64,000 nucleotides of DNA from Podarcis gaigeae (Eukaryota): the NCBI GenBank assembly GCA_964106915.2, contig OZ066914.1. One strand, given 5' to 3'. Below the pieces are notes generated by a model. It was not told where the DNA came from. It did no database searches and worked only from the letters and a program-made list of their open reading frames with translations. This document shows positions 23,100-56,607 of this stretch, piece after piece (positions within the stretch are counted from its first letter, which is position 1; every line of letters begins with the position of its first letter). Both the position numbers and the translations under genes were made by a program.

Positions 23100-24000
23100 G
23101 TTAAAGCAAATCTAAAATACCGGAAGTAGATCCCTGTATGTCACTCTAACCAGTGAAGTCTATGCTACCTAGCGAGTAACTGTCTCGTTCTCGCCGCTAG
23201 GTGGATGTTGAAACAAAACTACCGTGACCATCATGCCCTGCGGCCACGGCAAGGGGGCGGGGACTAGGACACATGCGCAGAACGCTCTTTCCTTGTTGCT
23301 ATGGGAGCCTACGGCAGGACAGCTGCTGGGAAGAGGTAGAATCCGCGTTCTCTTTTGTTCCTCCGCTGCGACGGCGGCATTTTGGCACCTGTCGCGACTC
23401 TTTCCCGGCTGGGGTTTGCGCCGGCGGCGGCCCCTCGTTGCCATGGCGACGTTGGCGTTGCCTCTCGCGTTCTAAAGATGCGCCGGGAGACGGCGAGGGA
23501 GGCAGCGAGGCCTCCGCCTGGGAGGATGTCACGTCCGCAGATCATCCACAGCGGCCACTTCATGGTGTCGGAGCCCCACGCCGACCCGGACCCGGACCCC
23601 GAGGCGGCTCTGAGCCAGCCAGGCCAAGGCGCCCCGCCGAGCGCGGCGGAGCGAGCGAGAAGGGCCGGCTCCGCGCGGAAGGCCGCGGCAGGGAAGGCTG
23701 GTGACGGGGCCCAGCTGGCCTCCGCCGCCGCCGCCGCTTACGACTTCGACACGGTGGACGAGGCCGCGTGCCTGTGCTACCGCTACGGGCCTCGAAGCAG
23801 CGGAGCCCTCAGCATCGACCCTTCGCTCACGAAGCTCTTCGAATGCATGACGCTCGCCTATAGGTAAGGGCGGGGCGGGGCGGGCAGGGCAGCCCCCGAG
23901 CCAACGGGGGGCAGCGGGAAGTGTGTGTCTGGGGGGAAGGGATAGAGAAGGGCCCGCCCGGAGGCTGCCCTTTCTTGCCTCCGGCCCTTGCCTCTCGGGA
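23100..24000 (+). promoter_or_regulatory. CpG-island promoter of the Mondo-family gene (ETS, GC-box, NRF1-like and RFX X-box motifs)
   Basis: ACCGGAAGT (~23119), GGGGCGGGG (~23253), CATGCGCA (~23272), GTTGCTATGGGAGC (23295-23308) and near-palindromic GTTGCCATGGCGAC (23437-23450) lie in a CpG-rich region covering exon 1. Confidence 0.65.
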
Positions 24001-27000
24001 TGCATTCAGGGAACCAGACTATGCCTTGGGAACTGCAGCACGACGAATTAGCCTGCCATTCATACGCAAGATATACTAGTATGCATGCAGATAAACGATA
24101 CTAAGAGAATCCAAATGCAGGTAACTTGGCATCGTTAAGTAAAAGCCTCGGATTCCTTGTAACTACAGACATAAAAGGAATTTTCACCCAAGAAGGCATT
24201 TCAAAGGCGCAGCTTGCCTTTGTCGTGTCTGCCATGCCAAGTTGAAATCTAAATGAGTGTATAAATCTAGATTTGTAGCTGCCAGTTAAGAAGTGCTCCC
24301 CTACAATCTTTCCTTCCACTTTAAGAACTTTCACTTATGAGAGGGAGGTTCTCACGCATCATGTGTGAGAACAGAGTAGTCAAGGAACGAAACTGACATT
24401 TTAGAGTCAGAAACGCATACATCTGTTGAAACCAACAAATCCAGTTTTGTAGTTAAAAAAAAGCAGGGGGCCTAGATATGACATAGAGTTGTGCCTAGTT
24501 CTCCAGCATTCTACTACCACTTGCTTTCTGGTACAGTTTTATTTATTTATTTACTCACTCACTCACTCTGGTTGCAGTTCTACACACAAGGGATTAGAAT
24601 CAATGAATAAGTCTCATTGAACTCCGTAGGAGTTACTTCTGAGAAAAGGTGCAGAGGATTGCACTGCTACTTATTTTACTGTGTTTGCAAGGTGCCCAAT
24701 AGCGTCTCTAGTGGCATATGGGAATATGTTCATATAAGCATAGCATAGAGGAGGGGAACTGACACTAACTTTAGTCTTCCCAGAAAATCATGTCAGAAAA
24801 GCACATTTTGCTGCTTAGACAGTGCTTCTGACCCATACATATTACTTTGGTTTTTATCTAGCCCATTTACAGTGTATCTCATACCCCAGTTGACTTGTTC
24901 ATTAAGCTGTCAAGTCCTTTAATCTACTCCTTTAATGTGTGGAAAGGAGAGAAAGTCTTAAATAACAGAAATTTCTATTTGACAGAGTGTAGTGGATAGA
25001 TAGTTATCATGAGTATTAAAGTGAGAAATGGACCGTGACCCAAGTTGCCCTGCCAGATGCTAGAGACATAATATCAAAAAGCTGTCTGGGTTATGTGGGA
25101 TTAAATATCATAAAGTATATCCACTGTGGTAAAGGTCTGTTTTGTCCCCTTTCTGATAGTAGTGTTGCTAAAGCATAAAAACTTGGCAAATTATATAAAC
25201 AGGAAGTTTTCACAGGACATGTATTTCTTCCTGTGCTCCCTTTAGCTTCTTAATAGAATTTTAATGTGAACTCTTGTGTAGAATTTTAATGATTTATGTT
25301 AAGGAACTAATTGGCTTGTTTTGCACAGTCTAGTTTTAATTATTGTTACCTGTGCTGTACTACGTTGAAAATTAATACATGCCCTGAATTTTTTGAATTG
25401 GTTGCCCCCCCCCCCAAACTTTTCTGTGAAGTAGGAAAGAAACTTGAGCAATGAAACAGGCTGCTTAGGGAGGTAATGAAATTTGCTTCGTTGGAAACTT
25501 TCAAAGAAAGGCTGGGTGGGCAACTCTCTGGAATGTTTTACATTACTGTGCTTAAGGGCATAACTTGGACTAGATTAGGGATCAAAAACTTGCAGTCTGC
25601 TCGCTGCATATGGCACCCAGAACACTTGATTGCTGGCTGTGTGCCTCTTAAAGTTTAGAAATTCTAGTGTTTCTTTTTTAAAGTAACATTTGACATGATT
25701 GCATAGACCATTTTGGACATGTGATGGTAAAACAACAACTCTCTTTTCTGGTTCTTGGTGCCAAACAGCCTATCCTGCACTGGTCTTGACCTTTGGGATT
25801 TCTCCTAGTTCTAAAAATAATTAAAATAAAAAGTACCACACTGTTTTAACCAGTATCCCTTTCCCAGGAATGTCTGGCCTTGATGTTAGCATATAGAGTT
25901 TTGAATTAAATAGCTGTAGTCCTTTCATATAAAAGTTGTATTCTTACCAGAGTTGCACATTCAGCAGTATGTTGCAGACTAGCTTCCCAACCAATATATT
26001 TGCTGCAAAATTACTGCTTCTGCCATTGAGATCATCTCCTTGTAAATATATATCTATGAAGCAGCTTTAAATCAAGAAAAAAAGTGTCCCAGCATTTTCA
26101 GCAACCTAGTGAACTGGAATAGATCCGCAGAACTGGTTTTTTTGGGTCGGTTCTTTGACTTCCAGCATTATGACATTTCAGACGTTGACTCCTTTAGGTA
26201 TTTTCTAGTTAATCTCCCACAACATTATGAGATGTCATCTTGGACTAAGCAAAAGGACAAAGGTAGTATGAGGAGTTTGAATGCCTGAAGAAATCCCCGC
26301 AACAGAGTCCTTTTTGACATTAACTTTGTCAAAAGTTCAGTTTACCATATACCTGAGCCCACTGGTTTCAGCTGGCAGTGCAAGCCTCTGCCCCCAGCCA
26401 GTGAAATAGACATTACATTTTGCTCAGTAGTAACAGAGAATCATATATTGTATCTTTCACAGCTATGCATTAGAACTGTGACTGATCTATCTTCCTGGGA
26501 TTATTCATTATTCATTCTGTCTCAAGCAGGTGCAATTTTGAATAAGAAGCTGTTGTGGCAGAATAGCAAAGGGGCATGGGTTCTGAACAGTATCTTGTTT
26601 GTTCTTTTACACAACTGTTCAGTGAAACAGCTGCCATGTTTGAAATGTAATGGGGCAGGGTGCAATAGGGTGGCATGAGAGTGTGGTCCAATACGCTTAG
26701 TGTGAGGATTTTTATGTGGGATGTTTGTGCACCTTCAAGTGAACTTCTGTAGGGCAGAATATGAGTGTGTGTTGCTGCTGATTAAACAGGGTGCGTGGGT
26801 GGAATGCAAGCTGCCAGTGTATGCCTGTATTCCTAAGGAGATGCTGGCTCATTATAATTTCTTCTCCTTCGTAAGAACATACAGATGAGGCACAGTTTTA
26901 CTTTAGCGGTGGAAGAAATAAACCCCTGAATTAACCTTCTAAGATGTTTTTAATCATTTGGATTACTCAAGTCAATACTATATTTCTCTGTTGTAGAGAT

Positions 27001-30000
27001 ACACTAACAAATTGGTTATTAATAGCAAAACACAAATCATTTAACTGGATGTGTTTTAAATTATGCTGCATTTCTTCAGAATAATTGAATTACCATAGGT
27101 TCTGTCCAGGAAATAGTTGTCCAGCACTCACTGACTCTTCGTAGATGGGGTTCTGCAACAATAATGAATGGGGAAGACCCCTTATAGTAAGGCTGGGAGT
27201 GGGGGTTATTTCCAGATCTGCCACCTAAAGCCAGGGCTATTTTTTCTTCTGTCACAATTGCCACATGGAGTTCCACCCCAAGGCTGGTATCTATAGCATA
27301 CTTTTTAAAAGGAAGATTTTGTCCTTTGTTGAGGAGCTTCATCAGAAAAACAGGAAGGCAGTATACATAGAGAGCCATGTAGTTCTGTGGGCAGAGCTTC
27401 TGTAATCAACACAGCTTCTTATCACCTCTATAATTATGTTCTACACTTATCAGCATATGCTACTTCTAACCTGTTCATTTTTCTCCTTCTCCCACAGTTT
27501 GCTCTAAAAAGTTGAGGAGGAATCAACATCCAGTGAGAGGTTTAGAATAAAGCAGGCATATTGGGTCAATCTGTGCAAAAGGTGAACATTTGTAGACATC
27601 TGAGTAGTTTACAGTTTATGGTTTTTAGTGCAGAATTTAGTTTTTTTGGCACAGATTAGTAATAAAGTGTGGCTATAGAATAGTCAAGCTTATTAAAGAG
27701 ATGTTCCTGTTCAGTGTGTTTTGAGCTGCCTTCTTCTTCTTTGGGTGTTGCCTGGCCCTGTTTCCCCTTGAAAGCCAGATATACTTGGTATTACAAGAGG
27801 TGGTTTTTTTGGCTTTCTCATTTGTAGTGAGAAACTTGTCTCTCCCAAATGGAAAACCTTCAAAGGGCTGAAACTGCTACAGCGTGACAAGATTCGACTC
27901 AATAATGCCATCTGGAGGGCCTGGTATCTGCAGTGTAAGTAGCCTGGAAGAAGGTATTTAAAACACAACAACAAACCAGCCATATAAAAGGTGATCCAAT
28001 ATGGGCAGATTAGGTGGGAACCACCAAATTCTGTGTATAAATTCAGAAAAAAATGGGTTCTTCCTCCATCCCTACACGTGTTTTCCATGACTTCCTCAAC
28101 CAAGGAGATTGTTTCACACAGAATTATGTATTGCAAGTTTGCAAAGCTTTATGCTAGCAAAAGTCACATATTAATTGCTTATGGATTTAAAGCTCTTCAG
28201 CTCTACTGCCTTATTTAGTGGATGCTGAAATGGGAGCGACTGCCAGCCAGCCAGCAAGTATTTTCTCTGTTTGGTCCTGCTTGAAGCTGTACTGCAGATT
28301 ACAGCCCCTTTTCTGCTATTTCATTCTGGATGCAGATGTGGAGAAGCGGCAGAACCCAGTGTGCAGTTTTGTGACCCCACTAGAGTGCAGTGATGTAGAT
28401 GTGCACCGCAAGCCTGAGGTGAGCAAAGGTTACTTGGGCCTTTCTTACTTAAGAACGTACAAAGAAGACAGATTACACATTTCTGTAAGTGACCCCTGGC
28501 TGCACCTTTATTTGGCAGGCTGTCATCATGGAAGGAAAGTACTGGAAACGCCAAATTGGGGTTGTCATCAGGGAATATCACAAATGGAGGTTGTTTTCCT
28601 ATACCCAGGTAAATGTCTTCTCCAGCAAGATGTGTTGTACTTCATATTGCTCCCCTTCACCCCTAGATGACATGTTCCACCCAAGCTCATACAGTCCTTT
28701 TTAGTGTCAACCAAGGAAATCAGGTAGCTCCAGCCAGAAGCACCTTGGAACTCCATTGTAAGAAGGTGGATTTTCTAGATGCTTCTTGCCGGGCTATCAT
28801 AGTCTGGATCTGGTGGTTTTGAGGTGATCTGGTACTAGACTGGTGAGGCTACATTTCTGTCTTACTCTGATGGGTGCCTTGGCCTATAGACTCATTTCCA
28901 CAGCTGCCAAAGGCTCTCATTCTCTTGGCCTCTCTCTCACTTCCACAAAGACACACACTGGTCACCCAGCTATCCCTGTGTGATTATTGTGGTCTGTGAT
29001 GGCTTTCTGAGGCCTCAGGTGTTCATTGTTGTTGTAGCAGTAGTAGTAGTAATAATAATAGTACATTATACCTAGCCCTTCCTCCCAAATGTGTCCAGGG
29101 CAGCAATGAGCCAGATAGGATTTTATTTAGCCACCTATGGTTTTTCTCTAGCTAAGTATTGTAATTGTAGTACTTTCAGTGGCCTAATCCTAAACATTTT
29201 GTGCATTTTGTTATAGGCTTCAAAGAAGATGGATAAACCCGTCTATGGTTCAGCTCAGGTGCTATTTTAATGCCTTGTTCCTATACTGCACCCTCCAGAT
29301 TCCCCTTTCCCCATGGCAGAGGGTGGAATTAAAAACGCTTGGGGGTTGTCCACAGCCATTCAGTATTCCAGCCCCTCATTTGAGTTTGCCTATAGTTGGA
29401 GTTCACAGCTCTTTCTCTCCCATTCTGGACAGGAAGTAGCTGATGACGTTCCAAGGGCAGAGCTGAAAACGGATGGAACAGATGCATGCCCCATGGACCT
29501 CGACCCCTTGCATGACCTGGATGCACTTCTGGACACCTTCATTTCTAGCCGCAACCCTTATGGTGGCCCCAACCTCCGTGGCCTTGGTGAGAGGCCTTGC
29601 TTTGTGCTCATTCCATCTATCTCTGGATCTGTCCCTTTCTACCAAGAAACCCTTTAAGTTTTCTCCACTGTCCCCAGAGGCTAGTACAGATGCCTCTAAA
29701 GGGTGGAGAGAGGTTTTGAAGTATCTCCATGTGAGAGCCAGTCCCTTGCTTGTGAACCAGAGAACAATTGCCATGGAACAAAGTAACAAGCGAGTGATAT
29801 TATTTCTCATTTTGTGTCTTCAGCTCACCAGGGAAATGCAGATATGATCCAGCCCACCCTGACCCAACTGCACCCTATCTTTGGGGAGGAGTTTATGGAC
29901 TTGGACCCCATTCAAGGTAACAACAGAGGTTTATATGGCTGTACTTAGTGGTAAGGTGGCGCATCTCAAAGCTGAAAGACATCCTCTGAAGCACTTTGTA

Positions 30001-33000
30001 TGGCTTCTTAAGACCACTCCAGACTGTGTTTAAATTATGTATCCATACTGTACACACTTGAAAGTATTCCGTTTGTTTATAAATGCTACTGAGTACATGC
30101 TGCTAGGGTCTCCTGATCAGCTGCAATTCCCTGCAGTGCTTATCTGTAAAAGAGCCCTTGGATTCCTCACAATTGCAGCTTGCATATTTACTAAACTCAC
30201 TGTTAGGGAGAAAACTGAAAAATGTGTCACTAAAGCCCAAAAATCAAATAGAAACATTTATTATTATTATTATTTTAAGCCCACAAGTTAATCACCAGTG
30301 TTGAAAGATTAACTTGTGACCTCAAGAGTAAATAACATCTGAGTCTGGGTCACCAAAGTGGGCTGAAAGCTGTCACTGGTGAGAGGAGACTATTTCCAAA
30401 CTGACATTGATGAAATTCTAGTTCACCCAAGGCCAGAGCAGAATGCTGCTGAGCAAACATGGTATGTCCTGGTAAGACCAGACATTATTTAAATTAGTCA
30501 GCATGCACGTAAAAATCCTCTTTTGGGCGTCCAGTGCTCTAATAGAAGACTCATTCTCCATATAATCACATGCATACTGTGCTTTATATATTGTTTGTCC
30601 CCTATCCCATTTTCTGAATCAGCCAGGACAAATTCTTCAGAGCCACTGTTTATCCCCTTTTCACAGGAAGAATAAAGTAGGCAAATTAATCTTGTATGAA
30701 TTCTTAATTTGAAAAATCTTAAACTTACAAGTTGGTCATCTCAAAATTTCTACTTGCAAGTATAGCATCTACATATTGAGCCTATTTCAGTCTCATTCCT
30801 GCCACTCCGACACATAACTCTGAAATCAGCAGTCCCCACCTGCAGATTGCTCCTGTTCTTGACTTGAGTTTCTCTACCAGTTGAGATATCCTGGATTTTA
30901 GGTCTCATCTTTCTTCGAAACCACCAATTGATGTCTTCTTGTATGGTGGATGTGAATGAATGAATGTTTATTATTACGACCAAACAGCCAACATGCTACC
31001 TGTATGGTGAAATCCTGATGATTCCTTGCTTAGTTGATTCAGACACACCAGCCAGTTATCTTCTGCCAGTTGCTCTTTATCTCCTCCCAGCCTTTTAAAT
31101 CTTTGCTTTCTTTTCACAGAATTCATCAATTCCTGTCGTTCTCAGCCCATGAACCAGGTAAGGAGAATAAATTTATCTGATAGCTTACAAACTCCTTGGG
31201 CTTCTGCAGCCCCTGATGCTTATTGCAGATACTGGTCTGTGCTTGATTTTGATTTTGGAAAGGCAATAGCCTTTTCTCAGCATTGCAAAAAAAAATGAGC
31301 AGTGAGAGTGCTCCCACTTGTATGATTTTCAGTGCAGCCATCTCCAGCCTGGACTCAGGAGTTGTGTTTGATTTGCACTCTCTTCTCCCCCCCCCCCCCC
31401 AGGCTCCTGCAGTAACGGATACTAGTGCTTTGAACCAGTGCAACCCAGATACACCTCTCATTGCCCCTGAGACCAAGGATCTCCCACCGCCCGGAGACTC
31501 TCTCAACCCCATTCCCATCTCACTGGATGTGGAGCCGCCTGTACCTTTGAATGGACAGCAGACCTTCCTGCCATTCTTCCCCACCTCCCCACTGAGGATC
31601 AGCCCGCCGCCTGTCTCTCCCATCTTGCGCATGCAGCCTCAAACCACTTTGGTCTTCTCTGTCATCACGCACACAGGATCAGAAACAAATTCTCCGTCTG
31701 TATTTCGGGACACTTTTGCTGTGCCAGTCTCTGCTCCTCCACCCAAGGATGGGAAATGCAGACACCTGCAACGGATTGCTCCAGCACCCTCCTCTAGCCA
31801 GCAGCCAACCCTTCCCGGTGCTCCGCTCCCCTGCCTGCTTGCAACTGGTATGTCCCTGCAAGGACAGGCTCTCTGCAGGGGAAATTGAGGCATTGCTTAC
31901 CTAGACTACAATGCTTCTCTAGATCCATTTGGAGTTTTAAGTCATACTGCAGAATTCTCCTTTCTTTTTGGTTGTTGTTTTCTGAAGCAAATCTCACCAG
32001 GATCAATTTTTGGAATCCCTAATTTAAACAACTGCATGCATTATTAGTGTTTATTTTGATATAATTATCTGAAGCTGGAGTTTAGCTTCATACTTTGGAA
32101 TCACTGGAAGCAAAAGCATTTTTCTGTACTGGAAAAATAAAATATGTGGTCCAGGGAGATAGTTTTTTGTGTTACTGCAGAATTTTTAAATTGTATACAA
32201 TGGTACCTCGATTTTCGAATGTAATCTGTTCTAGAAGACCGTTTGAGTTCTGAAGCATTCGAAAACCGAAAACTCAGTATAGAATTTTTTTGATGTGGTT
32301 TATTTATTGTTTATGACTTTTGTAATTATGTAAATCTTGTTATGCTGTAAGCTGCCTTGAGAATTGTTTTTTTAACTGTGGAAAGGCGGCATACAAATAA
32401 AAAAAAATGATGATGAAGAACTGAGTATGGAAAACCAATACGGAAGCCGCGTGGCATGTTCGACTTCTGAGGCATGTTTGAAAACCGAAGCATTTATTTT
32501 CGGGTTTCTGGCGTTCAAAAACTGAAATGTCTGTCAACAGAGACGTTCAAAAACCAAGGTACCACTGTATCTGACTTGAGCTGATAGGCATTACGTAACA
32601 GTGCCTGCATCTCCTTCAGTGGATTTAGGGTTTAGCCTTGCAGAAATTGTGTGTCAAAACTATGTACTGACTAGTCTGTAGAAGAGTAAAATGGTTAGTC
32701 CACAGGTATTGGAGACGGATTTAAGGTGGCATTCTTACTTGCAACCATACATATGTGTAAAGATGTCTGGGAGCTGCTGTTTGGAAAGGGAGAGAAAAAG
32801 TCCCCTATGTCCAGATTCCTGCTTTCATCCCCTTCTTGCTTCTCTGGAGTGTAGTTAAGCTTTTTGTTTTGATGCAGCCAGCAGTTTGAACCAGGTAAAT
32901 CAAGCAAAACTGCAAATGTCAACATTCGTCCAAATGCTTCATAGTTAAACAGAAAACCTTCAACTCATTAGTAGAAGTGAAAGGACAGCTCATTAATATA

Positions 33001-35900
33001 ACTATGTATATTTACTATCTTTTTAAAGTTAAATTTTAATTTTTCTTAGATCTACAAGTGAGCACAGATTTTCTTTACCCATTTCAGAACAAGGCTCTTG
33101 TGCCTTGTAGCTTTTTTGAACGGGGAAAGTTGTCAAGAGCTGTAGAGTCTTCTAATGTGCAAGCATTATGAAGAGAGAATCTGTAACTATGAAACTTTCC
33201 TCTCTACTCCATTTAAAACTCACACATAAAGGTCCAGAAGTCCTATCCTCTGTGTCTGATGGCAAAGTGGGTACCAAACAGTTGATGTCAGATTGGCTGG
33301 TACATGCAGGAATTTTATGAGATGCTAATGGTTATGGTGAAACCAGGCCTAGGTATGTTTTGGAAGGGATCCGAGGCAAGGATGCTCATTGGCCTCTCTG
33401 TTGGGTAGGGTGCCATGCATTTAAGTAGAGATTATTGACCCGAATTGTATTTTCAGTTGTGGTGGGTGGGATTTCATAAAGCAGCAGACTCCTTTTCATT
33501 AAATAAATTCTGCCACATTCAAAAACTTGGTCTACCGGTGAGCAGCTAAACTGAAGCTGTGTAGTTACAGGGAGTGAGTGATGCTGCTTTAGCCAGCCAA
33601 GTTTTGTACATGCATTGAGGGTTAATACATAGAGGCTGGGAAAATAAGAACATCTCTTTCATCTCTAGGTCCTGCCCCACTGCCCCTCACTCCAGTCATG
33701 AACTCTGTGCAGGTAAGGATGCTCTCCTCTGCCACCTTCCGTCTGCGAGGCCTCCTATCTGTGTTCTGCTTTTTGCCTCCTTGGAGTTGACAGGTGGCGT
33801 ATTTTTCTATCTTTCTGTTTGGCTGCTCTCTCTTTCTCTCAACCCTGCTTTTCCTCTCCCACAGGTGTGTGGCTTCCCAAAGCCCCCTGCGAATATGCTG
33901 AACTCATTCTCGGCAACGGTGAAGTCTCCTCCGCTTGCCTCTGCTGCTGCTTCCCCTGACACTGGTAAGCTGGCTCAGGAGTGTGCAAAGTCACTCGGCC
34001 TCTCTTCTTAGCAATATCTCATCCGCTTTCACTGGATTGGTCTATATGCCGTGCCAAAGTAGAAACTGAATACACACCTTAAGAGGAACTCACCTACCCC
34101 AGTATTTTTGGGATTATTTCAGGTGCCAAAACCAAGGAGAGAGCTGAGGACAACACTCTCTGCAAACCCCAGGAAGTGGACAAATGCTGTACTGCCAAGG
34201 TAATAAGAATACCCACACCACTGTACCCCATCTTGTTGGCTTGAGCGTTGTGGGAGAAGACATCTTTTCTCAAAGATGATAGCCAAAGGTGTAGTCGCCT
34301 GGCAGTGTCTCAAATCATGGCTTGATTGGCTCTTGCAGGGAAGTCGCAGATCAACACTTACCTCGGCTGACTATGCCCGCCGTAGGGTCATCAGCTCCGG
34401 CTTCAACACTCTTGCCACTCTGGTGTTGACAGGACCTGATCAAAGCAGCACTAAGGTATGCATCCCCCCCTGTACCAGAGGGTGGAAGGGCACATATTCT
34501 CTGCTGTTTGTCCAGTCCTCCCAATTTGCTTTGTGAACCTGCTGGAGCCATTCTTGTGGTCTTTGCCCTCCCAATCCATTTTACGCCTTTACTCCACCCC
34601 CTCACCTCCCCAGTTCAGCAAAGCGATGCTCCTGCAGAAAAGTGCAGCACATGTGGAAAGACTGCAGCAAGAGCGCCGACAAGCTCAGGAGACAGTTGAA
34701 AGACTACGTGGGGAAATCAAAGAGCTGAGCACTGCCATTGAGTGAGTTGCGGGGCTGGCTTAAGGGGTTTTCATTGGATCAGGGATACAAGTTAAAAGGT
34801 GAGAGGGGAACTCCTGTCAACAAGTTGTGGCTTTTCTCTTCCCTGCAGTGACTTTCAGCGCCAGCTTCCACCTACGGGAGCTCCTGTGCTGCCACCACAG
34901 TCAGATCAGGCTTCTCAACTCTATGAAGAGTATGTGCGCAAGCGCACCCTGCAGGACTGGCGCTTCTGGCTTGTATCCACCAGCGAGCATGTGGGATGGG
35001 ATGGGATGGGACAGGTTAGGGTGCAAGAAAGCAAGCCAGGGGAGGTATTTGGCATGGCATTAGTGGCCTGCTGGGTGCTTAAGGGGAGCAAGGAGACTTG
35101 GCTGCATAGGCTCCTTAACCTCTTCCAACCTGCAGTTCAGCATGGTGATTAAGCCACTCTTTGAGAGCTACACCAGGACAGTGAGCACAGGCAACGTCAA
35201 GGAATTCTGTGACTCAGTGTTGAGCTGGTTGGAGCAGCACTGCACCCTGCCCATCTTGCGCCCTGGTATGGATCAACAGGGAAATCTAGAAATGTCTTTC
35301 CCTTCACTGACCCATCTCTCCCCCCCCCCCCCATGGCTTTTAATGATCCTTGCCTACCTTCTTCTCTGAAATCTAGCACGTGCTTGTGTATCATTCACCC
35401 ATCCTACTCCTGCTTGAAGTACTCTTATGTTCACACATAACTAAGAGAGTGGAGCAGAACCATGGCTTACCAATTATACTCCACATTCCCGATTCCCTTT
35501 TCATGCCTTGCTAAGTTACTAGACACAGTTGCCCATCACTATGATCCTTTCCTTGCCCTGAAGCAAGATTATTGGGTACTGCCTTAAAGCAAGGCCCAGA
35601 TGTGACCTTAGGAGTTACCTGGCTTTGTGGTGTTTAGGAAAAATCTAGCTGGAGATGCCAGCTGTTCTCAAAAGTCTTCTATTCCTGATACTTCCAGAAG
35701 ACTTGAAAGGATTCTCTTTCTAAGAATTAGGAGAAAGGGTCTGCATTGAGTTCATTGTTTTGGTTTTTTGTCCCACAGCTATCTCTGGCTCCCTCCTGCA
35801 GCTAAGCAAGATCACATCCATACTGACTCGGCCAACCCAGTTGCGTGAACAAGCCCTGCAAGCAGTAGCTGGCCCTCCACACTACAAGAGCAACAGCTAG
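23478..35900 (+). CDS. MondoA/ChREBP (MLXIP/MLXIPL)-family bHLH-ZIP protein, divergent paralogue (759 aa, 17 coding exons)
   Basis: join(23478..23863,27828..27934,28336..28418,28519..28608,29217..29258,29433..29586,29824..29916,31120..31157,31403..31847,33669..33712,33865..33964,34123..34199,34339..34455,34614..34741,34849..34972,35136..35265,35779..35900) = 2280 nt, open and phase-consistent. Mondo conserved regions: IIHSGHFMVS (MCR1), IDPSLTKLFECMTLAYS (MCR2), KLVSPKWKTFKGLKLLQRDKIRLNNAIWRAWYLQY (MCR3), VCSFVTPL...EGKYWKR...REYHKWR (MCR4), NADMIQPTL (MCR5). These are followed by a Pro-rich middle, the HLH-ZIP (SKAMLLQKSAAHVERLQQER) and the DCD/WMC (QLPPTGAP...RTLQDWRFWLFSMVIKPLFESY...WLEQHCTLPILRP). 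There is an alternative in-frame start at 23526. The small middle exons are less certain. Confidence 0.9.
32196..32569. mobile_element. Tc1/mariner-type MITE with an internal LINE-tail fragment
   Basis: TA-CAATGGTACCTCG...AAGGTACCACTG-TA termini; internal TGTAAGCTGCCTTGAG...AAGGCGGCATACAAATAAA LINE-like 3' end. Confidence 0.65.
34973..35135 (+). other. U12-type (minor spliceosome) GT-AG intron
   Basis: 5' site GTATCCAC; branch point TCCTTAAC at 35112-35119, 16 nt before the intron end; lies between the RFWL and FSMV codons of the DCD. Confidence 0.75.
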
Positions 35901-38409
35901 GATGAAGACCAGGTCCAGTGCTATATGGACATCCTCACACACTACCAGGAAAGCCAGCAGCAGGGACCTCTATCTCAGGAATTCATTTGCCATGCAACAA
36001 AGAAGCTTAAGTTAGACAGTATTGGGGTTTAGATTGCCAGAGCAGAGAATCTCTGAGTATTCATTTTGGTGCTGGACACCTCTTAATACTCTCTTTTTGC
36101 AGAACTTCAGGTAGTAGAGTGGGGGATGTGGGGGATAAGGCAAGACACAGAGCCAGAATGCAGATTTAATTGCCAGATGTAGGATGCCAGCCATGGCTTT
36201 AGCCTCTTTCTGGGGTGAAAGATTAGCCGCATAAGAATTAGTGTGGCCTCCATTTCCTGTGTTTTCCCACCAGAGGGCAGTGAAAGTGGTTCTTGCAGGC
36301 CTTCTCAATACATAGAGAGATACTTCCTCTGTATGATTCATGGCTTTGTTCCTCACTAAATTTGAGTGTTTGTGGCTAAGTGTCGTTGACCACCCCCCCA
36401 TATACAGTATATTTTGATGGCAGATTTTACCTATGCAACCATACCCATGAACCCTTTCTGGGGTGTAGAGGATCAATTTCTCCCATCTTTCTTTTTAGCT
36501 CAGAGACCTTTTGTAGGACTGTGTATTTTCTGTAGATCTGCTGAATTTTTACAGGAGGTGGAATCTGACTTCAGCTCAGTATTTGATGGTACAATCCTCA
36601 GAGCAAACAGTATCATCACACCTTCAGTCTACAGCATAGCCTATGCCTGCCATTCTCCATCCCCTATGCTCATGTTTCTTTTCTCAAGTTACATATTAGC
36701 TTGGCGTGGAATCTGGAGTTTATTTATGCATAACATATCCTGTATTATGTTTGCCAAACTTTGTTCTAGGCTACCAGCTAATGTACAACAACTCTTGACA
36801 TCTGACCACAAGGAGGTTGTGTGATGGGGAAGACACCACCTAACCACTGATAGGCAACCTGTTCTGTCTCCACTACTGTAACTGTATGATTGCATAACCT
36901 TCTGCAAATGGCAATACCTCATTCCAAACTCCCAAGTTAGTCATAAAGCTAATGTCTACAGGAACAGGAGCCTAGCTGACTAAACTAGGGCAAAGGCTTT
37001 TTTACCCTTTCCAGAGTTTTGAGTAATATCTGAAGTAGCTCTGGACATTTTGGCACCTGATAACAGAGAATCCAAATGTCACACCTCTATCCCCCCACCC
37101 CACCCTCCCCCAGTTAACAGGTACAACCATTGAAACTAGCAGGAACTGTGGCGGTGCATAGATCCTTTTCATTCCTGATGGGTAAGCTCTATAGCTTTAT
37201 CTTTCATTACCAGATGAAAGCCTTTGATGATTGGAAATTGCTCTAGCTGCTTGCATACAAGATATTCTAATACTTATGTGTTCAGAAATACACGAGAGAA
37301 AGAGTTGGAAGGGACCACGAGGATCATCTAGTCCAACCCCTTGCAATGCAGGAATCTTTCACCCAATGTGGGGCTCGTTGTTGAGATCTGGCCTAGGTGT
37401 ACGTGGTTTTCTTTTCTTTTTACTGATTTATTATTTCTTCATTCTGCTACAGGCCCAAAACCTTCAGCAACAAAGCCAAAAAAGCTATTCTATTATCATA
37501 TAGGAATATAGTAATAGTATGGCAGTTTTCCATCAGCCACTTTAACCAAGGAATGGACAACTGATTGATTCCCATGGGAGACTCACCTCAATATACAAAA
37601 TCTACTTCAAGCCCAGGTGTGCTTTCTGTCTGTGGGATGTTAATGTCCCTTTTCTGTACCTCCTTTACTCATGAATGATGGTGGTGCTTTTTAAGAGTCC
37701 GCATTAGCTGAAGGTAACCACTCTGCATTTATGTGAAGTTAATGCACAATACAGCTGACCCTTTCACTGTTCAGCATGGGAGGTTTACTGCAGAAAAGAC
37801 TTCCAGTGCTTGCTCACCTAGATGTAGTTACTGATAGCACTTTACTTCCTCCAGTCCTGTAGGATTTCTTCAGTTAATGTGTATTAAAAAAAGAATGAGA
37901 GCACACCTGAATTATGAATTCAATCTTGAAAAATATTCAGTGGACCATTTGAGATTTCTTGTGTTTCTATATCATTTTGTAATTTTAGCACTATTTCTGT
38001 ATGTTCCACATATGTCACTAAAATACATTTGAGTAATCTTTAAGTGGTGTTTTCCTTTTTCACAATTAAGAAACTCCAATCTTTTCATACATGTAGGCAG
38101 CTGCCAGCCTTTGCAGTTCCATCTTTCAAAAGCATCCCACAACCAACTTCTGCCCAGACATCCCCACTGCTCAGCTGCTAAGGCCTAGGGATAGGCAAAT
38201 AGCACTTCAGTTGTGGGGGGGGGGGAGCACACTATTCAGTTGTTCATAGTGTTAATTCAGCTGGGCAGCAGGCAGAGAGGTATGCAATAGATCTCTCTGT
38301 GTGGTTGAAGAGTCTGTACATCTTCCCTGAGCAGGGTGGGGAGAATAATGCGTCACAAACTATTCAGATGTGGCCCCAATGACACATGTAGCTGTTAGAT
38401 GTGCAAGTG

Positions 38410-38797: not shown

Positions 38798-39995
38798 TCA
38801 GAGGCAATATCCATGCCACAGGCTGCAATGGAAGCATATGGAACATGGTTACTGTCTGAAAGAATCCTGACTTTGCATCTTACATGCCTCCTCCACCTAC
38901 TGTGCCAAACAGCAGGCATGGGCAGCACAACAGCAGCAATTGTACATGTTTTACAGTCAGTAAGCAAATGATCTGTGGGGAGGCCACAGCTCTCAGCTTT
39001 CAATTCTAGGAAATTATTGGCCAGAGAGAAGGTGGCGAGTAGGAAAAGGAATACATAGGAAGGAAGTGGGGGAAAGGATAAGTGGGAATACCTGCTACTG
39101 AGCGTGTCCACATTTCTTACATGTAAGCCTTTTTAACCCTTTAAAATTTTTGTTGCCCCCTTAAAGTTGGGCCCTGAGCTGCTTTCAGAGACTCTAGTGA
39201 GCATAAGAATGATGGGCCAAAGTCATGTCTGGATGTGAGACAAGGAAGCCCCATGTAAGCTATTCGGTGCTTCCTAAAGCAAGTAAACTGTAAATACATA
39301 CTAAGGCTTCAGTGCTCAGTGCTTCAAATGGAGTCGTAGTAAATGATGTGGGTTGGAAGTACAGCAAAGGTGAAGCAAAAATCTCATTCTTCTGTAAGGT
39401 TCTCACACAACATGCAAGCTGACTGCCAAATGTCAACTTCGTAAGCGCCTCTGCTTCATGACAATCTTGGCCACTAGGACTTCCAACCATGAAATGGCCA
39501 GGACAGTCTGCCAAACACCCTGACAGAAGCTGCAAATAAAGGAGAACTTGTTCTTGGCAACTGATCCCTTTCCTATTCTAATCCCTGATAGGTGAGTTAT
39601 GGATTTTATACTTGACCTTTGCTAAGCTCATACTTCCATTTGCCCAGTTCATTTTGTGTATTACCTCTTGCGATACAGTACTCCTCATTCATACAGTTGT
39701 GAATAAAAGATGCCCAGAGCTTAGCCAAATTATCATGTGACCTGCTTAGCACTGCCATGGCCTTGCACCACCAAGCCCAACCTCAATAGTCTTCCTCTTC
39801 CAGATAGATCTCATTACCCTAGAATAGATGCTTCCACCCAGTGCCTGAGAAGGACAGAGCAGCTCTTCTATACTAACCTGTATGTAACCAGAGGGTCCTT
39901 GTTGTGCTTCTCTAGCAATTCCCGCACCATAGCAGGGGGGTTGAGACCCAGTAACTCTGCCCTCTCCCAGCGTTGCAAACGGGTGATTCCTATCA

Positions 39996-40043
<48 letters not shown>

Positions 40044-42360
40044 TATTATTTGTACCCCGCCCATCTGGCTGGGTCTCCCCAGCCACTCTGGGCGGCTTCC
40101 AACAAAGATGAAAGATACACTAAAATGTCACATATTAAAAACTTTCCCTGTCGGGAAAAAAGGTCTCTCAAAGTGGCCTCTTCAACACCAGCGATCTTCA
40201 ACCATCTTCCTTGCAAGTCTATTGCCACTAGATGGACTTGAGAATTAACTAGGAGTCCCCTTACCTGGTATGCTGCCACTAATTATAACGTAACACTTTA
40301 ACAGAGCATAGGGAGACTGGTCCCTGCCCCATGGAGGTATATCTATAATTGTGCATGGAGGGAGGCAGGGAAAACCTATGCTTTCATTGTAGTGATGTGT
40401 ACTTTGGCTCAGTTGTAGTAGCAGCATGATTGGAAGTTCTTACCTGTACAGGGGCCGTACTGCCAGCTGAGGTCAAATTGCTTTAGTGTCTCCAGCTGGT
40501 CTGGATGTGCAGCATCTTGGACTTCCTGGACTGTCACTGCATCTGATCAGAGAGAAATGGATGATCATCACTGCATTATGGAGAGCCCTTGTATGAAATG
40601 AGTGTGCAGGAAAGGGTTAACATAATTCTTTAGCCAACCCCATTACATTAGTTATCTCTGGTTTGCTCTACAACCCGTGTAACTCTGCCTGTGTTTTTTT
40701 AGCATCTCTTCACCCACACTTCAATCTCATGTAAATATGAACACACACAACATGTGCTGACTGAAGGACACAACACTAACATAATTAATCCATTGCTCAT
40801 TGAGAATGCTCTTCTGTGGAGGGTTCCCAGCTTTTTGGGAGTATATGTTTCATATAATTTTACTTCCTGCTAAATGATTTTTCAAATACTTCACTTTCAC
40901 AGCAATCCTGTGCAACAGTTCATCACCACTGTACTATAGCAACTTGCTAGCTAAGCAAGTGGCAAGCCTATTACTGATTAACCCTCACTTGCATAACCGT
41001 GGTATTGAGTTATGTGCAGATCCAACAAACAACCTAGGAGACGACCAAAGCAAGAGCGTGCAGGGAAAGAGTTTGCAAGAACTGATGTATTGCAAAGCTC
41101 AAGGGCCACTCCAAAGGGCATCCATCTACTCCCCACCTAAAGCTGCTGGATTTTCACCCTTTCCCCTCATTCAGATTATCTACCTATTGGTAACAGAGGT
41201 GTCACCTTGTGGTGAGTGGGCTTGCACATGCCTATGACCCTTGTGAGCGAAGCCGTCGGGAGTCTCGTACTCCCAACAGGGTCACCTAAGGTGGCAAGGT
41301 CAAAGGGGAAGAGCTAGACAAAGAATGATCCAAGAAGTCATCAACAACAGAGCAGGTGGCAGATAACAAGTGGCATGTTACATCAGCTGTGAAGGCGGAT
41401 GAAGGCTGCAGCAGATAAGACAGAGCCTTCCTGCGAAGCGTGCACTGATCTACACACATGAAACAAATTCACACACAAGCATCTTCCAAAAACCCATACC
41501 AAACCCAAACCCATAAAACTCCCATGGCGATCGGCAAATGGTAATGGTGTCTCCGAAAATTTTTACACATCACTTGGGAAGACAGGTGAACTAATGCCGG
41601 TGTACTGGAAGAAGCAAAGATCACCAGTGTTGAAGCAATGATTCTTCAGCATCAACTATGTTGGACTGGTTATGTGCGGATGCCTGATTATCGTCTTCCA
41701 AAGCAACTACTCTATTCCGAACTTAAAATGGAAAACGTAATGCTGGTGATCAACAAAAGAGGTTTAAAGACTCCCTCAAGGCAAATTTTTAAAAACGTAT
41801 AAAAACTGACAATTGGGAAACACTGGCCTGTGAGTGCTCCACTTGGAGAACAGCCTTTACCAAAGGTGTCATGAACTTTGAAGGTGCTTGAACTCAGGAT
41901 GAAAGGGAAAAACACAATAAGAGGAAGACACATTTGGCAAACCCTCACCATGATCAACTCCCACCTAGAAACCTATGTTTCCACTGTGTGGATCCAGAAC
42001 TGGCCTCACAATCGCTTACGGACTCACTGTTAAGATTGTGTTCTTGGAAGACAATCTTACTCGGCTACGGGAGATCGCCAAAGAAGAAAAAGGATTTACG
42101 GGAGCACGACCAAATCAGTTGCACTGGGCATGGAGCCTTGGGGGTGCTGCAGGGAATGCTGAAAGTATGATTTAGAATGAAGTGAGAGAGGTGAGGGGTG
42201 CTGAATTTTTGTGTCGCACCAGGTGCTGCTGAAATTCAAGCATCCCTTCCTAGCAATACTCACCGTGCAGCGGACTCTGAGCCTTCTTTGTTTCCTTACT
42301 GTCTCTTTTCCTCTTCTTCACCACTTGGAAGGAGTCTGTGATTAGCCGTTTCCTGCCCAT
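38798..42360 (-). CDS. POLD4: DNA polymerase delta subunit 4 (p12), 110 aa
   Basis: complement(join(38798..38822,39878..39989,40444..40542,42264..42360)) = 333 nt. Translation: MGRKRLITDSFQVVKKRK...QLETLKQFDLSWQYGPCTGITRLQRWERAELLGLNPPAMVRELLEKHNKDPLVTYSLWHGYCL*. The N-terminal PIP-box/degron and the FDLxWQYGPCTGITRLQRW signature of p12 are both present. Confidence 0.95.
39997..40147 (-). mobile_element. Short LINE 3'-end (L2-like) with (TAT)n tail abutting the POLD4 exon 3 acceptor
   Basis: GGAAGCCGCCCAGAGTGGCTGGGGAGACCCAGCCAGATGGGCGGGGTACAAATAAT(ATT)n on -; another copy of the family lies on + at ~13520-13630. Confidence 0.75.
41520..42090 (+). mobile_element. RTE-clade LINE 3' fragment in POLD4 intron
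   Basis: Degenerate RTE ORF C-terminus (ITWEDR*TNAGVLEEAKITSVEAMILQHQLCWTG..RMPDYRLPKQLLYSEL) ending in a short (GAA)-type tail; 41235-41520 may be further element sequence. Confidence 0.75.
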
Positions 42361-43049
42361 GATTCCATGGGGCAATGCTCACGGAGCATTAACAGGCTGC
42401 TCTAAACAAGGAGCTGAGGAGAAGCAGAGACTGTTAGACAAGCTGCTGACTAGGACCTTCAATCTCCAAATCTACTGTCCTAACACCAGCTACCAGTCAA
42501 AACGACTTTATTTCTGGGAGAAAAACCCCGCAAAAAGGTGTCTGGACTCTCCAAGCTGGTGGCCTTCTCCCATATGGAAGTTCTTTGCCTCCAAACACAT
42601 TAAAGAGCCTAAGTTTATGTAAAGGAGAAGTATATTCTGTGCATGGTCAGAGACCCTACACTCTTTATAAATGCATTTGCATTTTCCAGGACTGTGTGTT
42701 GACACTGAAAAATTCTCAGTCCGACTCCAAGGCAGGGCAAAATCCCTTCCCTGAGCGGGAGGCTATTCCTCTGTCAGGAAGTGCGACAGAATCTCTTGTG
42801 GTCCCCATCTTGGACTCTGCTTCCTCCTGCAGCCATCAAAGCAATGCACGATTCGGCCCTCTCCTCATCCAGACCTCGAGAACAGACTCCCCGGTTCCTG
42901 CTCTAACCACTGGTTACTCTCCCCCACACCCAAGAATCCAAGAGGCCTGGGGATCAAAACGATCCCTCCCCCTCACCCCTCTGAACAAATAGATACATCA
43001 CCCTCACGTTCCTTCTATAGCAGCCACGTTCCAGTTTTTGGACCCTTCC

Positions 43050-44030
43050 TTTCCAGACGCCCCCCCCCCCCCGCAGCCTTTTCGAGACGCCCCCTCGAGT
43101 TCCCTCCCCTAATGCCCAAACGCGGAAGGGTAGGAGAGTCTTTCTCCTCCTGTCACCCCGGAAAAACGGCTCCGCGAGATCTCAAGAAGCAGCTGCGTCC
43201 TTACTAGGAGCCGGGGGCTGTCCGTGCTCCCCCCCCCCAATGTCTCTTGGGGGCGATGCGAGGACTGCGGGGTGGGAGCTGCTGGCACGAACGGCTTTCG
43301 ATTCCCCCCCGGAGTCGCTCTGGGTCTCCCCGGAGCAGCCGCTTGTTGTTTTTGCACGGATCGGCCAATGGCAGCGCTGCTTTCGCTTTGCGTTCAAGGC
43401 GGCGGCAGCAGAGGAAGCGCCCCTGGCGGCCGATCCGGGGAAGGACGGCGGGTTAAGGCGTCGCAGGTGGCGCCTCTTGCTCTTCGGGACCCCGCTATTC
43501 TCCCGGCTGTTTCCTCGCTCCCCGCACTCCATCCCCCAGTCCCGCATCTATGCGCTCTCTTCCTTTTGCTCGAGAGATTTTGCCGCGATCAGAGGAGCAG
43601 AAGCCACAGAACCGCCAGAGGTAGCAACGAGACGCCTGCCGGTTAATAGTAAGGCACGGGGCATGTCCGGGCCAAAACGCTGATCCGGAGACGGACCAAG
43701 AAAGGAGCGGGGCGTCCAAACGAGGAAACGCCGCCATAGCAACTTGCCTGCTGCGCTAGCTTAGCCGCTGTTTGGGCAAGGAGTGGGGAAATGGAGCAGA
43801 AAATAAATGCTTTACCTGGAGACAGTTTTTCCCAAAATCACTGAACTAGAGAGCAGCTTCCAGCAGCAGCGGTCCTCTCCCTTATAGCTCCCTCGATCCC
43901 TGCTCCTCCGCGATCTCCTTCAGCACCACCTGGTGGGAGAGGCTTGCAGCCGGCAGAAGCTTCAGCTGAACCTCCCGTTCTATGGAAGCGGACTCGCCTC
44001 TTTTTCATTCGGAGAATCGGCCAATTAATC
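43050..44030 (-). promoter_or_regulatory. POLD4 CpG island, probable non-coding first exon (donor after 43816) and TATA-like/CCAAT motifs
   Basis: CpG-rich 43050-43760; CAG|GTAAAG donor on - at 43816/43815; CTATAAG on - at ~43881-43887; CCAAT at ~44021. Confidence 0.55.
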
Positions 44031-48443: not shown

Positions 48444-48794
48444 GTGAGCAGTGTAAGAGAGCTTCTTGCCTGTAGTTCACAAGAGAAGGTTTTTGTTCAT
48501 CAGAATTGAGCTAGAAGGAAGGCGAGGGCTTTCGTGTTACAGTTAGAAGCCCAGGGGGAGCTGTGCCATCTGACAATGGGGTGTAGACATAGGGGTTAGA
48601 TAAGCAATAATAAAAATAATTTTATTATTTGTACTCTGCCCATTTGACTGGGTTGCCCCAGCCACTTCAATTACATAGAAGACTTCTCAGTTTGGGGATT
48701 CTGGTGAGCAACAAAGAACTGATCTCTCTCCCAGGTGCTCATCACAGGCATTGTTTCTGCTGGTACCAGCCCATCCGCTTTCACCTCCCAAGCT

Positions 48795-56570: not shown

Positions 56571-56607
<37 letters not shown>

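What the first reader, a model, noticed from the sequence alone, without database searches (positions are those of the whole stretch)
23478..35900. Candidate third vertebrate Mondo paralogue (neither MondoA nor ChREBP) between SSH3 and POLD4
Seen: a complete, open 17-exon MLXIP/MLXIPL-family gene with its own CpG-island promoter, directly between SSH3 and POLD4. Established: mammals have two Mondo genes (MLXIP 12q24, MLXIPL 7q11), and human SSH3 and POLD4 lie close together at 11q13 with no Mondo coding gene that I know of. The SSH3 paralogue SSH1 is also on 12q24, like MLXIP. Inference: this is a whole-genome-duplication ohnologue kept in squamates and lost in mammals, adding an unstudied node to the Mlx glucose-sensing network.
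Basis: partly seen in the sequence, partly recalled or inferred. Interest (0 to 1): 0.88.

Follow-up and report, generated by a model that had tools for sequence, protein, structure and literature searches.

The report
Third vertebrate Mondo gene, lizard copy
This lizard carries an intact, transcribed third relative of the sugar-sensing transcription factors MondoA and ChREBP, part of an old gene lineage shared with lungfish, salamanders, caecilians, turtles, crocodiles and some birds, not found among annotated mammal proteins, and changed at the residues that normally read DNA.

Summary
Window 23478-35900 (+) holds an open 17-exon, all GT-AG Mondo-family gene of 759 aa. It has a CpG-island 5' end and lies between an SSH phosphatase gene (+) and POLD4 (-).

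The protein is 97.6-98% identical to Podarcis proteins that NCBI names 'MLX-interacting protein-like'. It is under purifying selection (dN/dS 0.23 against Lacerta agilis). RNA of a close relative is spliced at nine modelled introns.

In a site-heterogeneous ML tree it sits deep in a well-supported third clade (100/99) of lungfish, caecilians, salamanders, turtles, crocodile, tuatara, squamates, ostrich and emu. This clade lies outside the MLXIP and MLXIPL clades (each 100/100). Nesting among sarcopterygian MLXIP is rejected (AU p about 1e-49).

Ostrich, Microcaecilia and several turtles each carry all three genes on different contigs. The SSH-gene-POLD4 order recurs in emu, python and Lacerta.

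So the reading as a third paralogue holds, but the gene is not squamate-specific. Its sister relation is unresolved. Loss in mammals is shown only by absence among annotated proteins.

The glucose-sensing module, HLH-zipper and C-terminal dimerisation domain are kept.

I found no paper describing this lineage.

The parts
23200..24000 (+). CpG island over the 5' end and exon 1 (likely promoter)
   Evidence: GC 0.68, CpG o/e 0.95. No transcription start was mapped.
23478..23863 (+). Exon 1: start codon, MCR1 (QIIHSGHFMVSEPH) and MCR2 (SIDPSLTKLFECMTLAY). A second in-frame ATG at 23526 matches where many orthologues start.
27828..27934 (+). Exon 2: MCR3 (KWKTFKGLKLLQRDKIRLNNAIWRAWYLQ)
28336..28418 (+). 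Exon 3: start of MCR4 (NPVCSFVTPLE...HRKPE)
28519..28608 (+). Exon 4: MCR4 (EGKYWKRQIGVVIREYHKWR). The basic cluster that follows it is weakened.
29217..29258 (+). Exon 5
29433..29586 (+). Exon 6, MCR6-like region. An alternative acceptor at 29409 would add 8 aa.
29824..29916 (+). Exon 7: MCR5 (GNADMIQPTLTQLHP)
   Evidence: The junction to exon 8 is seen as a loose end at 31118 in RNA.
31120..31157 (+). Exon 8
   Evidence: spliced reads
31403..31847 (+). Exon 9: proline-rich middle region, the least constrained part (dN/dS 0.44)
33669..33712 (+). Exon 10
33865..33964 (+). Exon 11
34123..34199 (+). Exon 12
34339..34455 (+). Exon 13: altered basic region plus helix 1. Leu at the His site is 34357-34359; Asp at the Glu site is 34369-34371.
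34614..34741 (+). Exon 14: helix 2 and leucine zipper
34849..34972 (+). Exon 15: start of the C-terminal dimerisation and cytoplasmic localisation domain (DCD)
35136..35265 (+). Exon 16: DCD
35779..35900 (+). Exon 17: end of the DCD and the stop codon
8717..21280 (+). Context: upstream slingshot phosphatase gene. It is SSH3 by synteny with ANKRD13D and POLD4. Only the exons seen are covered, and the 5' exons lie further upstream.
   Evidence: DEK_C, DSPc; the same neighbour in emu, Lacerta and python
39871..42360 (-). Context: downstream POLD4 (three coding exons seen). A CpG-rich stretch at 42800-43900 may be its promoter.

Best explanation
The gene is the lacertid orthologue of a third vertebrate Mondo lineage, called C3 here. 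C3 is distinct from MLXIP (MondoA) and MLXIPL (ChREBP). It separated from them before the crown-gnathostome radiation of those two genes, most likely as an ohnologue of the early vertebrate genome duplications. It has stayed at the ANKRD13D-SSH3-[C3]-POLD4 locus. Shown: it is retained in lungfish, caecilians, salamanders, turtles, crocodilians, tuatara, squamates and palaeognath birds. No copy is annotated in mammals, frogs, ray-finned fish, coelacanth or cartilaginous fish in the database searched. It is a working gene: intact, spliced, transcribed and under purifying selection. Inferred mechanism: the protein keeps the N-terminal Mondo module (MCR1-5). In MondoA and ChREBP this module mediates 14-3-3 and CRM1 binding and the glucose-metabolite response. 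It also keeps the HLH-zipper and the C-terminal domain that pair with Mlx. Tetrapod members replaced the two residues of the basic region that read the E-box: His became Leu, Phe, Pro or Ser, and Glu became Asp. A C3:Mlx dimer is therefore predicted not to read a canonical CACGTG half-site on the C3 side. It would act either as a nutrient-regulated competitor for Mlx that dampens MondoA and ChREBP output, or as a factor with a new half-site preference. The invariant Asp-x-x-Arg-Arg suggests that the region still has a function.
For: Gene model and integrity. Clade membership: one search gives C3 100/99, tetrapod C3 100/100, MLXIP 100/100 and MLXIPL 100/100, and the internal C3 topology follows the species tree. 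rejects C3 nested with sarcopterygian MLXIP (AU p 1.7e-49). In one search the lungfish C3 pair alone still lies outside both clades. Three genes in one species on different contigs: ostrich P0176/P0229/P0372, Microcaecilia P0190/P0269/P0350, Carettochelys P0164/P0245/P0344, Chelonia and Emydura. Synteny: emu has ANKRD13-SSH-C3-POLD4-GLYAT-CLCF1-like, Lacerta agilis, python, loggerhead turtle, and this window. Constraint: dN/dS is 0.23 overall, 0.14 in the N-terminal part and 0.12 in the C-terminal part, with dS 0.07. Transcription: stranded RNA-seq and spliced contigs from four studies. Basic region: none of about 70 tetrapod C3 proteins keeps Glu, whereas all 255 MLXIP/MLXIPL proteins do, and lungfish C3 keeps both His and Glu. 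The Pfam HLH match starts only at profile position 8-12 and scores 20-27 bits, against 40-46 bits over positions 1-53 in the canonical proteins. The review PMC8431614 says that Glu at position 9 makes the strongest DNA contact and that all bHLH factors binding the CA core have it.
Against: The deep branching order is weak. C3 outside (lamprey,(MLXIPL,MLXIP)) has 93/90 support, and MLXIPL+MLXIP only 81/47. AU does not reject C3 as sister of MLXIP (p 0.16) or of MLXIPL (p 0.58). C3 evolves about four times faster than MLXIP by my sum of branch lengths, so long-branch effects could push a younger duplicate outwards. C3 was found only in sarcopterygians, which a genome-duplication origin explains only through several independent losses. 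The constrained trees used for AU came from unfinished searches under LG+F+G4. No binding to Mlx or to DNA was tested. Asp might still allow weak E-box contact. RNA evidence is from a close relative, not shown for this individual, and covers exons 7-17 only. Canonical MLXIP and MLXIPL were not retrieved for this genome.
Confidence: 0.8

Rival explanations
1. C3 is a younger duplicate of MLXIP made in stem sarcopterygians. It then evolved fast, and its position outside the MLXIP clade is a long-branch artefact.
For: C3 was found only in lungfish and tetrapods. Lungfish C3 scores about the same against MLXIP (622 bits) as against tetrapod C3 (602 bits). The C3 stems are long, 0.41 to 0.81. C3 as sister to all MLXIP is not rejected.
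Against: Nesting with sarcopterygian MLXIP costs 97-186 log-likelihood units and is rejected at p 1.7e-49. The site-heterogeneous PMSF tree, which resists long-branch attraction, still keeps MLXIP monophyletic at 100/100 without C3. The gene sits next to SSH3/ANKRD13D, the paralogues of SSH1/ANKRD13A that are linked to MLXIP in human (map positions from my own knowledge). A late small-scale copy would not be expected to land there.
Confidence: 0.12
2. It is the species' own MLXIP or MLXIPL orthologue moved to a new place.
For: NCBI names some members 'MLX-interacting protein' (Pogona, Anolis carolinensis, Chelonia, Zootoca). No canonical squamate MLXIP was retrieved here.
Against: The protein does not nest in either clade. 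A squamate (Rhineura) has a separate ChREBP. Turtles, a crocodile, the ostrich and a caecilian have separate MLXIP as well as C3. The locus is the same from emu to python.
Confidence: 0.01
3. Mechanism rival: despite the Glu-to-Asp change, C3:Mlx still binds ChoRE-type E-boxes. On this view C3 is simply a third glucose-responsive activator with its own tissue profile.
For: Asp keeps the carboxylate. Arg-Arg and helix 1 are conserved. The glucose-sensing module and MCR5 are kept.
Against: Glu at position 9 is conserved in all bHLH factors that bind the CA core. Factors without it bind other half-sites or none (PMC8431614). The His is lost as well. The whole basic stretch fails to match the Pfam HLH profile. 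The change has been fixed in all tetrapod members found.
Confidence: 0.25
4. It is a decaying or untranslated gene copy.
For: The middle region is loosely constrained (dN/dS 0.44). The king vulture product is flagged low quality.
Against: The 17-exon frame is open here and in dozens of species from lungfish to birds. dN/dS is 0.12-0.14 in the domains. The RNA is correctly spliced.
Confidence: 0.02

Closest known systems
MondoA (MLXIP)
   Same: The same 17-coding-exon plan. MCR1-5, HLH, leucine zipper and the C-terminal DCD all align. It keeps the YDFDTV stretch between MCR1 and MCR2, as MondoA does. It is linked to an SSH and an ANKRD13 paralogue.
   Different: It forms a separate clade. It is about 150 residues shorter, mostly in the middle. 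It evolves about four times faster. His and Glu of the basic region are replaced in tetrapods. The basic cluster after MCR4 is weakened. It lies at a different locus, SSH3-POLD4.
ChREBP (MLXIPL, MondoB)
   Same: The domain plan. The loop length of the HLH resembles ChREBP and ancestral Mondo more than MondoA.
   Different: It forms a separate clade. ChREBP of amniotes lost the YDFDTV stretch, while C3 keeps it. The basic region differs. No evidence was sought for a ChREBP-beta-like alternative first exon.
HLH proteins with a non-canonical or missing basic region (Id proteins; bHLH-PAS partners of ARNT such as HIF1A, SIM and AHR)
   Same: The E-box-reading Glu at position 9 is lost while dimerisation helices are kept. 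This offers two models: sequestering a partner (Id) or reading a different half-site beside a canonical partner (bHLH-PAS with ARNT) (PMC8431614).
   Different: There is no homology beyond the HLH. C3 keeps a basic stretch with an invariant Asp-x-x-Arg-Arg, unlike Id. Nothing was tested experimentally.

Membership tests
Mondo family (Mlx-interacting bHLH-ZIP factors) | N-terminal Mondo conserved regions MCR1-5 | tested here: met
   In the alignment, MCR1, MCR2, MCR3, the core of MCR4 and MCR5 are all recognisable and highly conserved. N-terminal dN/dS is 0.14.
Mondo family (Mlx-interacting bHLH-ZIP factors) | Helix-loop-helix plus leucine zipper | tested here: met
   Pfam HLH scores above its cut-off in the Podarcis orthologue P0130 (23 bits against a cut-off of 20.7), tuatara and turtle. 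The zipper heptads align.
Mondo family (Mlx-interacting bHLH-ZIP factors) | Canonical basic region H-x-x-x-E-x-x-R-R that reads CACGTG | tested here: not met
   The window has L-T-S-A-D-Y-A-R-R. None of about 70 tetrapod C3 proteins keeps Glu, against all 255 canonical proteins. The Pfam match skips profile positions 1-7 or 1-11. Lungfish C3 does meet this feature.
Mondo family (Mlx-interacting bHLH-ZIP factors) | C-terminal dimerisation and cytoplasmic localisation domain (DCD/WMC) | tested here: met
   Aligned throughout. C-terminal dN/dS is 0.12.
Mondo family (Mlx-interacting bHLH-ZIP factors) | Heterodimerises with Mlx and responds to glucose metabolites | not testable with these tools
   Needs co-immunoprecipitation and reporter assays.
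Mondo family (Mlx-interacting bHLH-ZIP factors) | 17 coding exons, as inferred for the MLXIP/MLXIPL ancestor (PMC4766361) | tested here: met
   17 GT-AG exons. The paper's statement was read.
MLXIP orthologue group | Nests within the gnathostome MLXIP clade | tested here: not met
   MLXIP is monophyletic at 100/100 without it. Nesting among sarcopterygian MLXIP is rejected.
MLXIPL orthologue group | Nests within the gnathostome MLXIPL clade | tested here: not met
   MLXIPL is monophyletic at 100/100 without it. The constraint for nesting inside sarcopterygian MLXIPL was written but not run.
Ohnologue of MLXIP/MLXIPL from the early vertebrate genome duplications | Diverged before the gnathostome radiation and lies in a paralogous chromosome block | tested here: inconclusive
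   The tree and AU test fit a divergence before crown gnathostomes. The locus next to SSH3/ANKRD13D/POLD4 is conserved. The paralogy of that block with the MLXIP region rests on human map positions from my own knowledge. No copy was found in a shark or a ray-finned fish.

The most novel reading that the evidence does not exclude
Most non-mammalian tetrapods run a three-member Mondo network. In it the third member senses glucose metabolites and pairs with Mlx, but cannot read the E-box. It would then be a natural, nutrient-regulated brake on ChREBP and MondoA, or a factor with a new DNA half-site. On this reading mammals, and perhaps frogs and most neognath birds, lost that arm.
Probability: 0.4. 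Interest if true: 0.8.

Novelty: new variant of a known kind. Interest (0 to 1): 0.7.

Why it matters
The two dedicated evolutionary studies of this family state that vertebrates have only two Mondo genes (PMC3177325, PMC4766361). Work on sugar handling in birds and reptiles considers only MLXIPL and MLXIP. A conserved, expressed third member with an intact sensing module and an altered DNA-reading head would change how the Mlx network is modelled outside mammals. It offers a natural experiment on what the basic region of a Mondo protein does. It can also mislead orthology calls, because databases name it 'MLX-interacting protein', 'MLX-interacting protein-like' or 'ChREBP-like' at random.

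Tried and rejected
- treekit's AU test under the PMSF mixture did not finish in three calls. I replaced it with IQ-TREE LG+F+G4 constrained searches. These also did not finish on the single CPU, so the AU test used their checkpoint trees. The size of the rejected difference (97-186 lnL) makes that conclusion safe. The two non-rejections are soft.
- The constraint 'C3 inside sarcopterygian MLXIPL' was written but not run.
- The look-up of encoding contigs found nothing for isoform proteins P0176 and P0144, and gave no DNA for Microcaecilia because the gene is longer than 100 kb. No amphibian or lungfish synteny was obtained.
- A paper search for the run id of the lungfish transcript gave nothing. 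I take P0193 for a lungfish only because it is 73% identical to a Protopterus protein.
- Scan notes hold no entry for MLXIP, MLXIPL or ChREBP elsewhere in this genome.
- The joined (spliced) protein model was not sent to any search tool. Searches used exon 1 by reference and database proteins. The joined model was built only inside scripts from the window file, for alignment, trees and dN/dS.
- No human or other mammalian DNA was searched.
Full report
**What is in the sequence**

The + strand between 23478 and 35900 carries Mondo hallmarks that can be read straight from the ORF list (IIHSGHFMVS, LTKLFECMTLAY, GNADMIQP and a zipper-DCD tail).

Using the Podarcis raffonei protein P0130 as a guide, I mapped 17 coding exons. 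All have GT..AG introns and there is no internal stop. Exon 6 has two possible acceptors 24 nt apart. The downstream one (29433) has the better pyrimidine tract and matches the orthologues, giving 759 aa.

A second in-frame ATG at 23526 is where many orthologues begin.

The 5' end is a CpG island: 23200-24000 has GC 0.68 and CpG o/e 0.95. The window has no N.

**Neighbours**

- Upstream on + are slingshot phosphatase exons. DEK_C lies at 17170-17322. The DSPc catalytic exon lies at 19294-19497 and scores 79.7 bits.
- Downstream on - is POLD4. Its exons are 42360-42304, 40504-40436 and 39990-39871, and PF04081 scores 45.4 bits.
- A scan note places ANKRD13D just before the window.

**Is it a working gene?**

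- All 17 exons align without gaps to the Lacerta agilis locus L004.
- Nei-Gojobori dN/dS is 0.23 overall. It is 0.14 for the N-terminal module, 0.44 for the proline-rich middle and 0.12 for the bHLH-ZIP-DCD part.
- dS is 0.07, close to the intron divergence of 0.06. The counts are small (37 synonymous and 28 non-synonymous differences).
- On window 30000-35950, a stranded raw RNA-seq run and three small contig sets (guessed to be RNA) were laid. They come from a species about 1-2% diverged and represent four studies.
- Depth sits on the exons. The first mates lie on the - strand, which in the usual stranded design means RNA of the + strand.
- Spliced joints match introns 8 to 16 of the model to the base. 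A loose end at 31118 carries the end of exon 7. One contig of 3605 nt spans many exons.
- This is presence and splicing in a close relative, not a tissue profile. Exons 1-6 were not covered by the call.

**What lineage is it?**

I searched exon 1 (by reference) against 1.84 billion representatives. This found full-length relatives of about 770 aa in an agamid lizard and the axolotl, ahead of MondoA and ChREBP proteins.

I then searched with the agamid protein. That gave a block of about 85 clusters from the following groups:

- squamates and tuatara;
- many turtles and Crocodylus;
- ostrich and emu;
- three caecilians and two salamanders.

A score gap (566 to 476 bits) separates this block from canonical MLXIP. 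A lungfish transcript and a Protopterus protein join the block. A king vulture 'low quality' protein groups with ostrich and emu in a FastTree on a long branch.

No mammal, frog, ray-finned fish, coelacanth or cartilaginous fish protein scored above MLXIP level. This is absence among annotated proteins of 426-1354 aa, not absence from genomes.

**The tree**

The careful tree used IQ-TREE with LG+C20+F+G4 by PMSF on 65 rows and 712 columns.

| Clade | Support (bootstrap / SH-aLRT) |
|---|---|
| C3 (lungfish, amphibians, sauropsids) | 100/99 |
| Tetrapod C3 | 100/100 |
| MLXIP, including chimaera, shark, ray and ray-fins | 100/100 |
| MLXIPL, including ray-fins and coelacanth | 100/100 |
| C3 outside (lamprey,(MLXIPL,MLXIP)) | 93/90 |
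| MLXIPL + MLXIP | 81/47 |

- The window protein is sister to Podarcis. The internal order of C3 follows the species tree.
- AU test: C3 nested with sarcopterygian MLXIP is rejected at p 1.7e-49.
- C3 as sister of all MLXIP (p 0.16) or of all MLXIPL (p 0.58) is not rejected.
- With the fast tetrapod C3 rows removed, the two lungfish rows still stay outside both clades.
The exact sister relation is open.

**Three genes per species, same locus**

| Species | C3 | MLXIP | ChREBP |
|---|---|---|---|
| Ostrich | P0176 | P0229 | P0372 |
| Microcaecilia | P0190 | P0269 | P0350 |
| Carettochelys | P0164 | P0245 | P0344 |

- In these three species the three genes lie on different contigs. Chelonia and Emydura also have all three.
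- Crocodylus has C3 plus MLXIP. Rhineura, a squamate, has C3 plus ChREBP.
- The emu locus reads ANKRD13 - SSH - C3 - POLD4(-) - GLYAT(-) - CLCF1-like(-).
- Lacerta agilis and python read SSH - C3 - POLD4(-).
- The loggerhead turtle reads C3 - POLD4(-).

From my own knowledge of the human map (not tested here), ANKRD13D, SSH3, POLD4, CLCF1, KDM2A, CORO1B, PITPNM1 and CDK2AP2 lie at 11q13.2. Their paralogues ANKRD13A, SSH1, KDM2B, CORO1C, PITPNM2 and CDK2AP1 lie at 12q24 with MLXIP. This is the pattern expected of an ohnologue rather than of a late local copy.

**A feature that bears on function**

In invertebrate Mondo, lamprey, MLXIP and MLXIPL the basic region reads H-I-S-A-E-Q-K-R-R-F-N-I-K. 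This holds in 255 of 255 proteins checked.

- Lungfish C3 keeps the His and the Glu.
- Every tetrapod C3 protein with a recognisable basic region (about 70) has lost the Glu. It is Asp in all but emu, which has Asn.
- Nearly all have lost the His, which is Phe, Leu, Pro or Ser. Arg-Arg stays.
- In the window the two sites are Leu at 34357-34359 and Asp at 34369-34371.
- Pfam's HLH profile matches tetrapod C3 only from position 8-12, with 20-27 bits. It matches positions 1-53 with 40-46 bits in horse MondoA, gorilla ChREBP and lungfish C3.
- A review states that Glu at position 9 makes the strongest DNA contact and is present in all bHLH factors that bind the CA core. bHLH-PAS members without it read other half-sites, and Id proteins lack the region (PMC8431614).
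I reached it independently and tested it across the clade.
- Two other notes fit the alignment only in part. One says the basic cluster after MCR4 is weakened (KKRLQK becomes TQASKKMDK here; turtles keep KKK). The other says the MCR6 region is shortened by four residues in lacertids.

**Mechanism (inferred)**

MCR1-5, the HLH-zipper and the DCD are the most constrained parts. The simplest reading is therefore a protein that is still regulated like a Mondo protein and still pairs with Mlx. Its own half of the dimer no longer reads CACGTG. Two outcomes are possible:

- It competes for Mlx and dampens ChREBP and MondoA output.
- It reads a new half-site beside Mlx, as bHLH-PAS proteins do beside ARNT.

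The invariant Asp-x-x-Arg-Arg over roughly 350 million years argues that the stretch is not free to drift. This slightly favours a retained, altered DNA or partner contact. None of this was tested.

**Novelty**

Two phylogenomic papers state that vertebrates have two Mondo genes in single copy (PMC3177325; PMC4766361). Searches for a third Mondo paralogue under several names found nothing. The gene models exist in NCBI annotation under inconsistent names, so the sequences are public. The lineage and its altered basic region appear undescribed in the library I could search.

**Limits**

- The joined protein model was not sent to any search tool. It was used only inside scripts.
- No mammalian DNA was examined.
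- No amphibian or lungfish synteny was obtained.
- Canonical MLXIP and MLXIPL were not located in this genome.
- The AU trees came from unfinished searches.

Noticed in passing
window 49464-51774, 55740-58230, 63405-64000 (+): There are three glycine N-acyltransferase-like gene copies in tandem. ORFs at 48629-48901 and 62570-62842 are near-identical, which points to a recent segmental duplication about 14 kb long. In emu a single GLYAT lies beside POLD4 on the other strand.
   Followed up: partly
window 29409 vs 29433: Exon 6 has two in-frame AG acceptors 24 nt apart. The upstream one would add 8 residues (LFLSHSG...). Podarcis isoforms use the downstream one. The reads call did not cover this place.
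   Followed up: no
window 23273-23431: The Zootoca vivipara model P0129 has a 60-residue N-terminal extension. It matches this stretch, but in a different reading frame from exon 1 in the window, so the extension is probably an annotation artefact or lineage-specific.
   Followed up: no
window 32189-32586 (intron 9): RNA contigs and reads of both directions pile up here, with many loose ends. This looks like a dispersed repeat rather than an exon.
   Followed up: no
L003 (emu) 10001-18744; P0070 (king vulture): Emu C3 has Asn instead of Asp at the Glu site, and bird C3 proteins have a skewed composition. A king vulture 'LOW QUALITY' protein groups with them on a long branch. Neognath birds may therefore keep a hard-to-assemble or decaying copy.
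   Followed up: partly
database names of P0119, P0138, P0145, P0170, P0187, P0479: The same lineage is named 'MLX-interacting protein', 'MLX-interacting protein-like' or 'carbohydrate-responsive element-binding protein-like' in different genomes. Name-based orthology for MLXIP and MLXIPL in reptiles and amphibians is therefore unreliable.
   Followed up: partly
window 42800-43900: A CpG-rich stretch (GC 0.60, CpG o/e 0.77) lies just upstream of the first POLD4 coding exon on the - strand. It is probably the POLD4 promoter.
   Followed up: no
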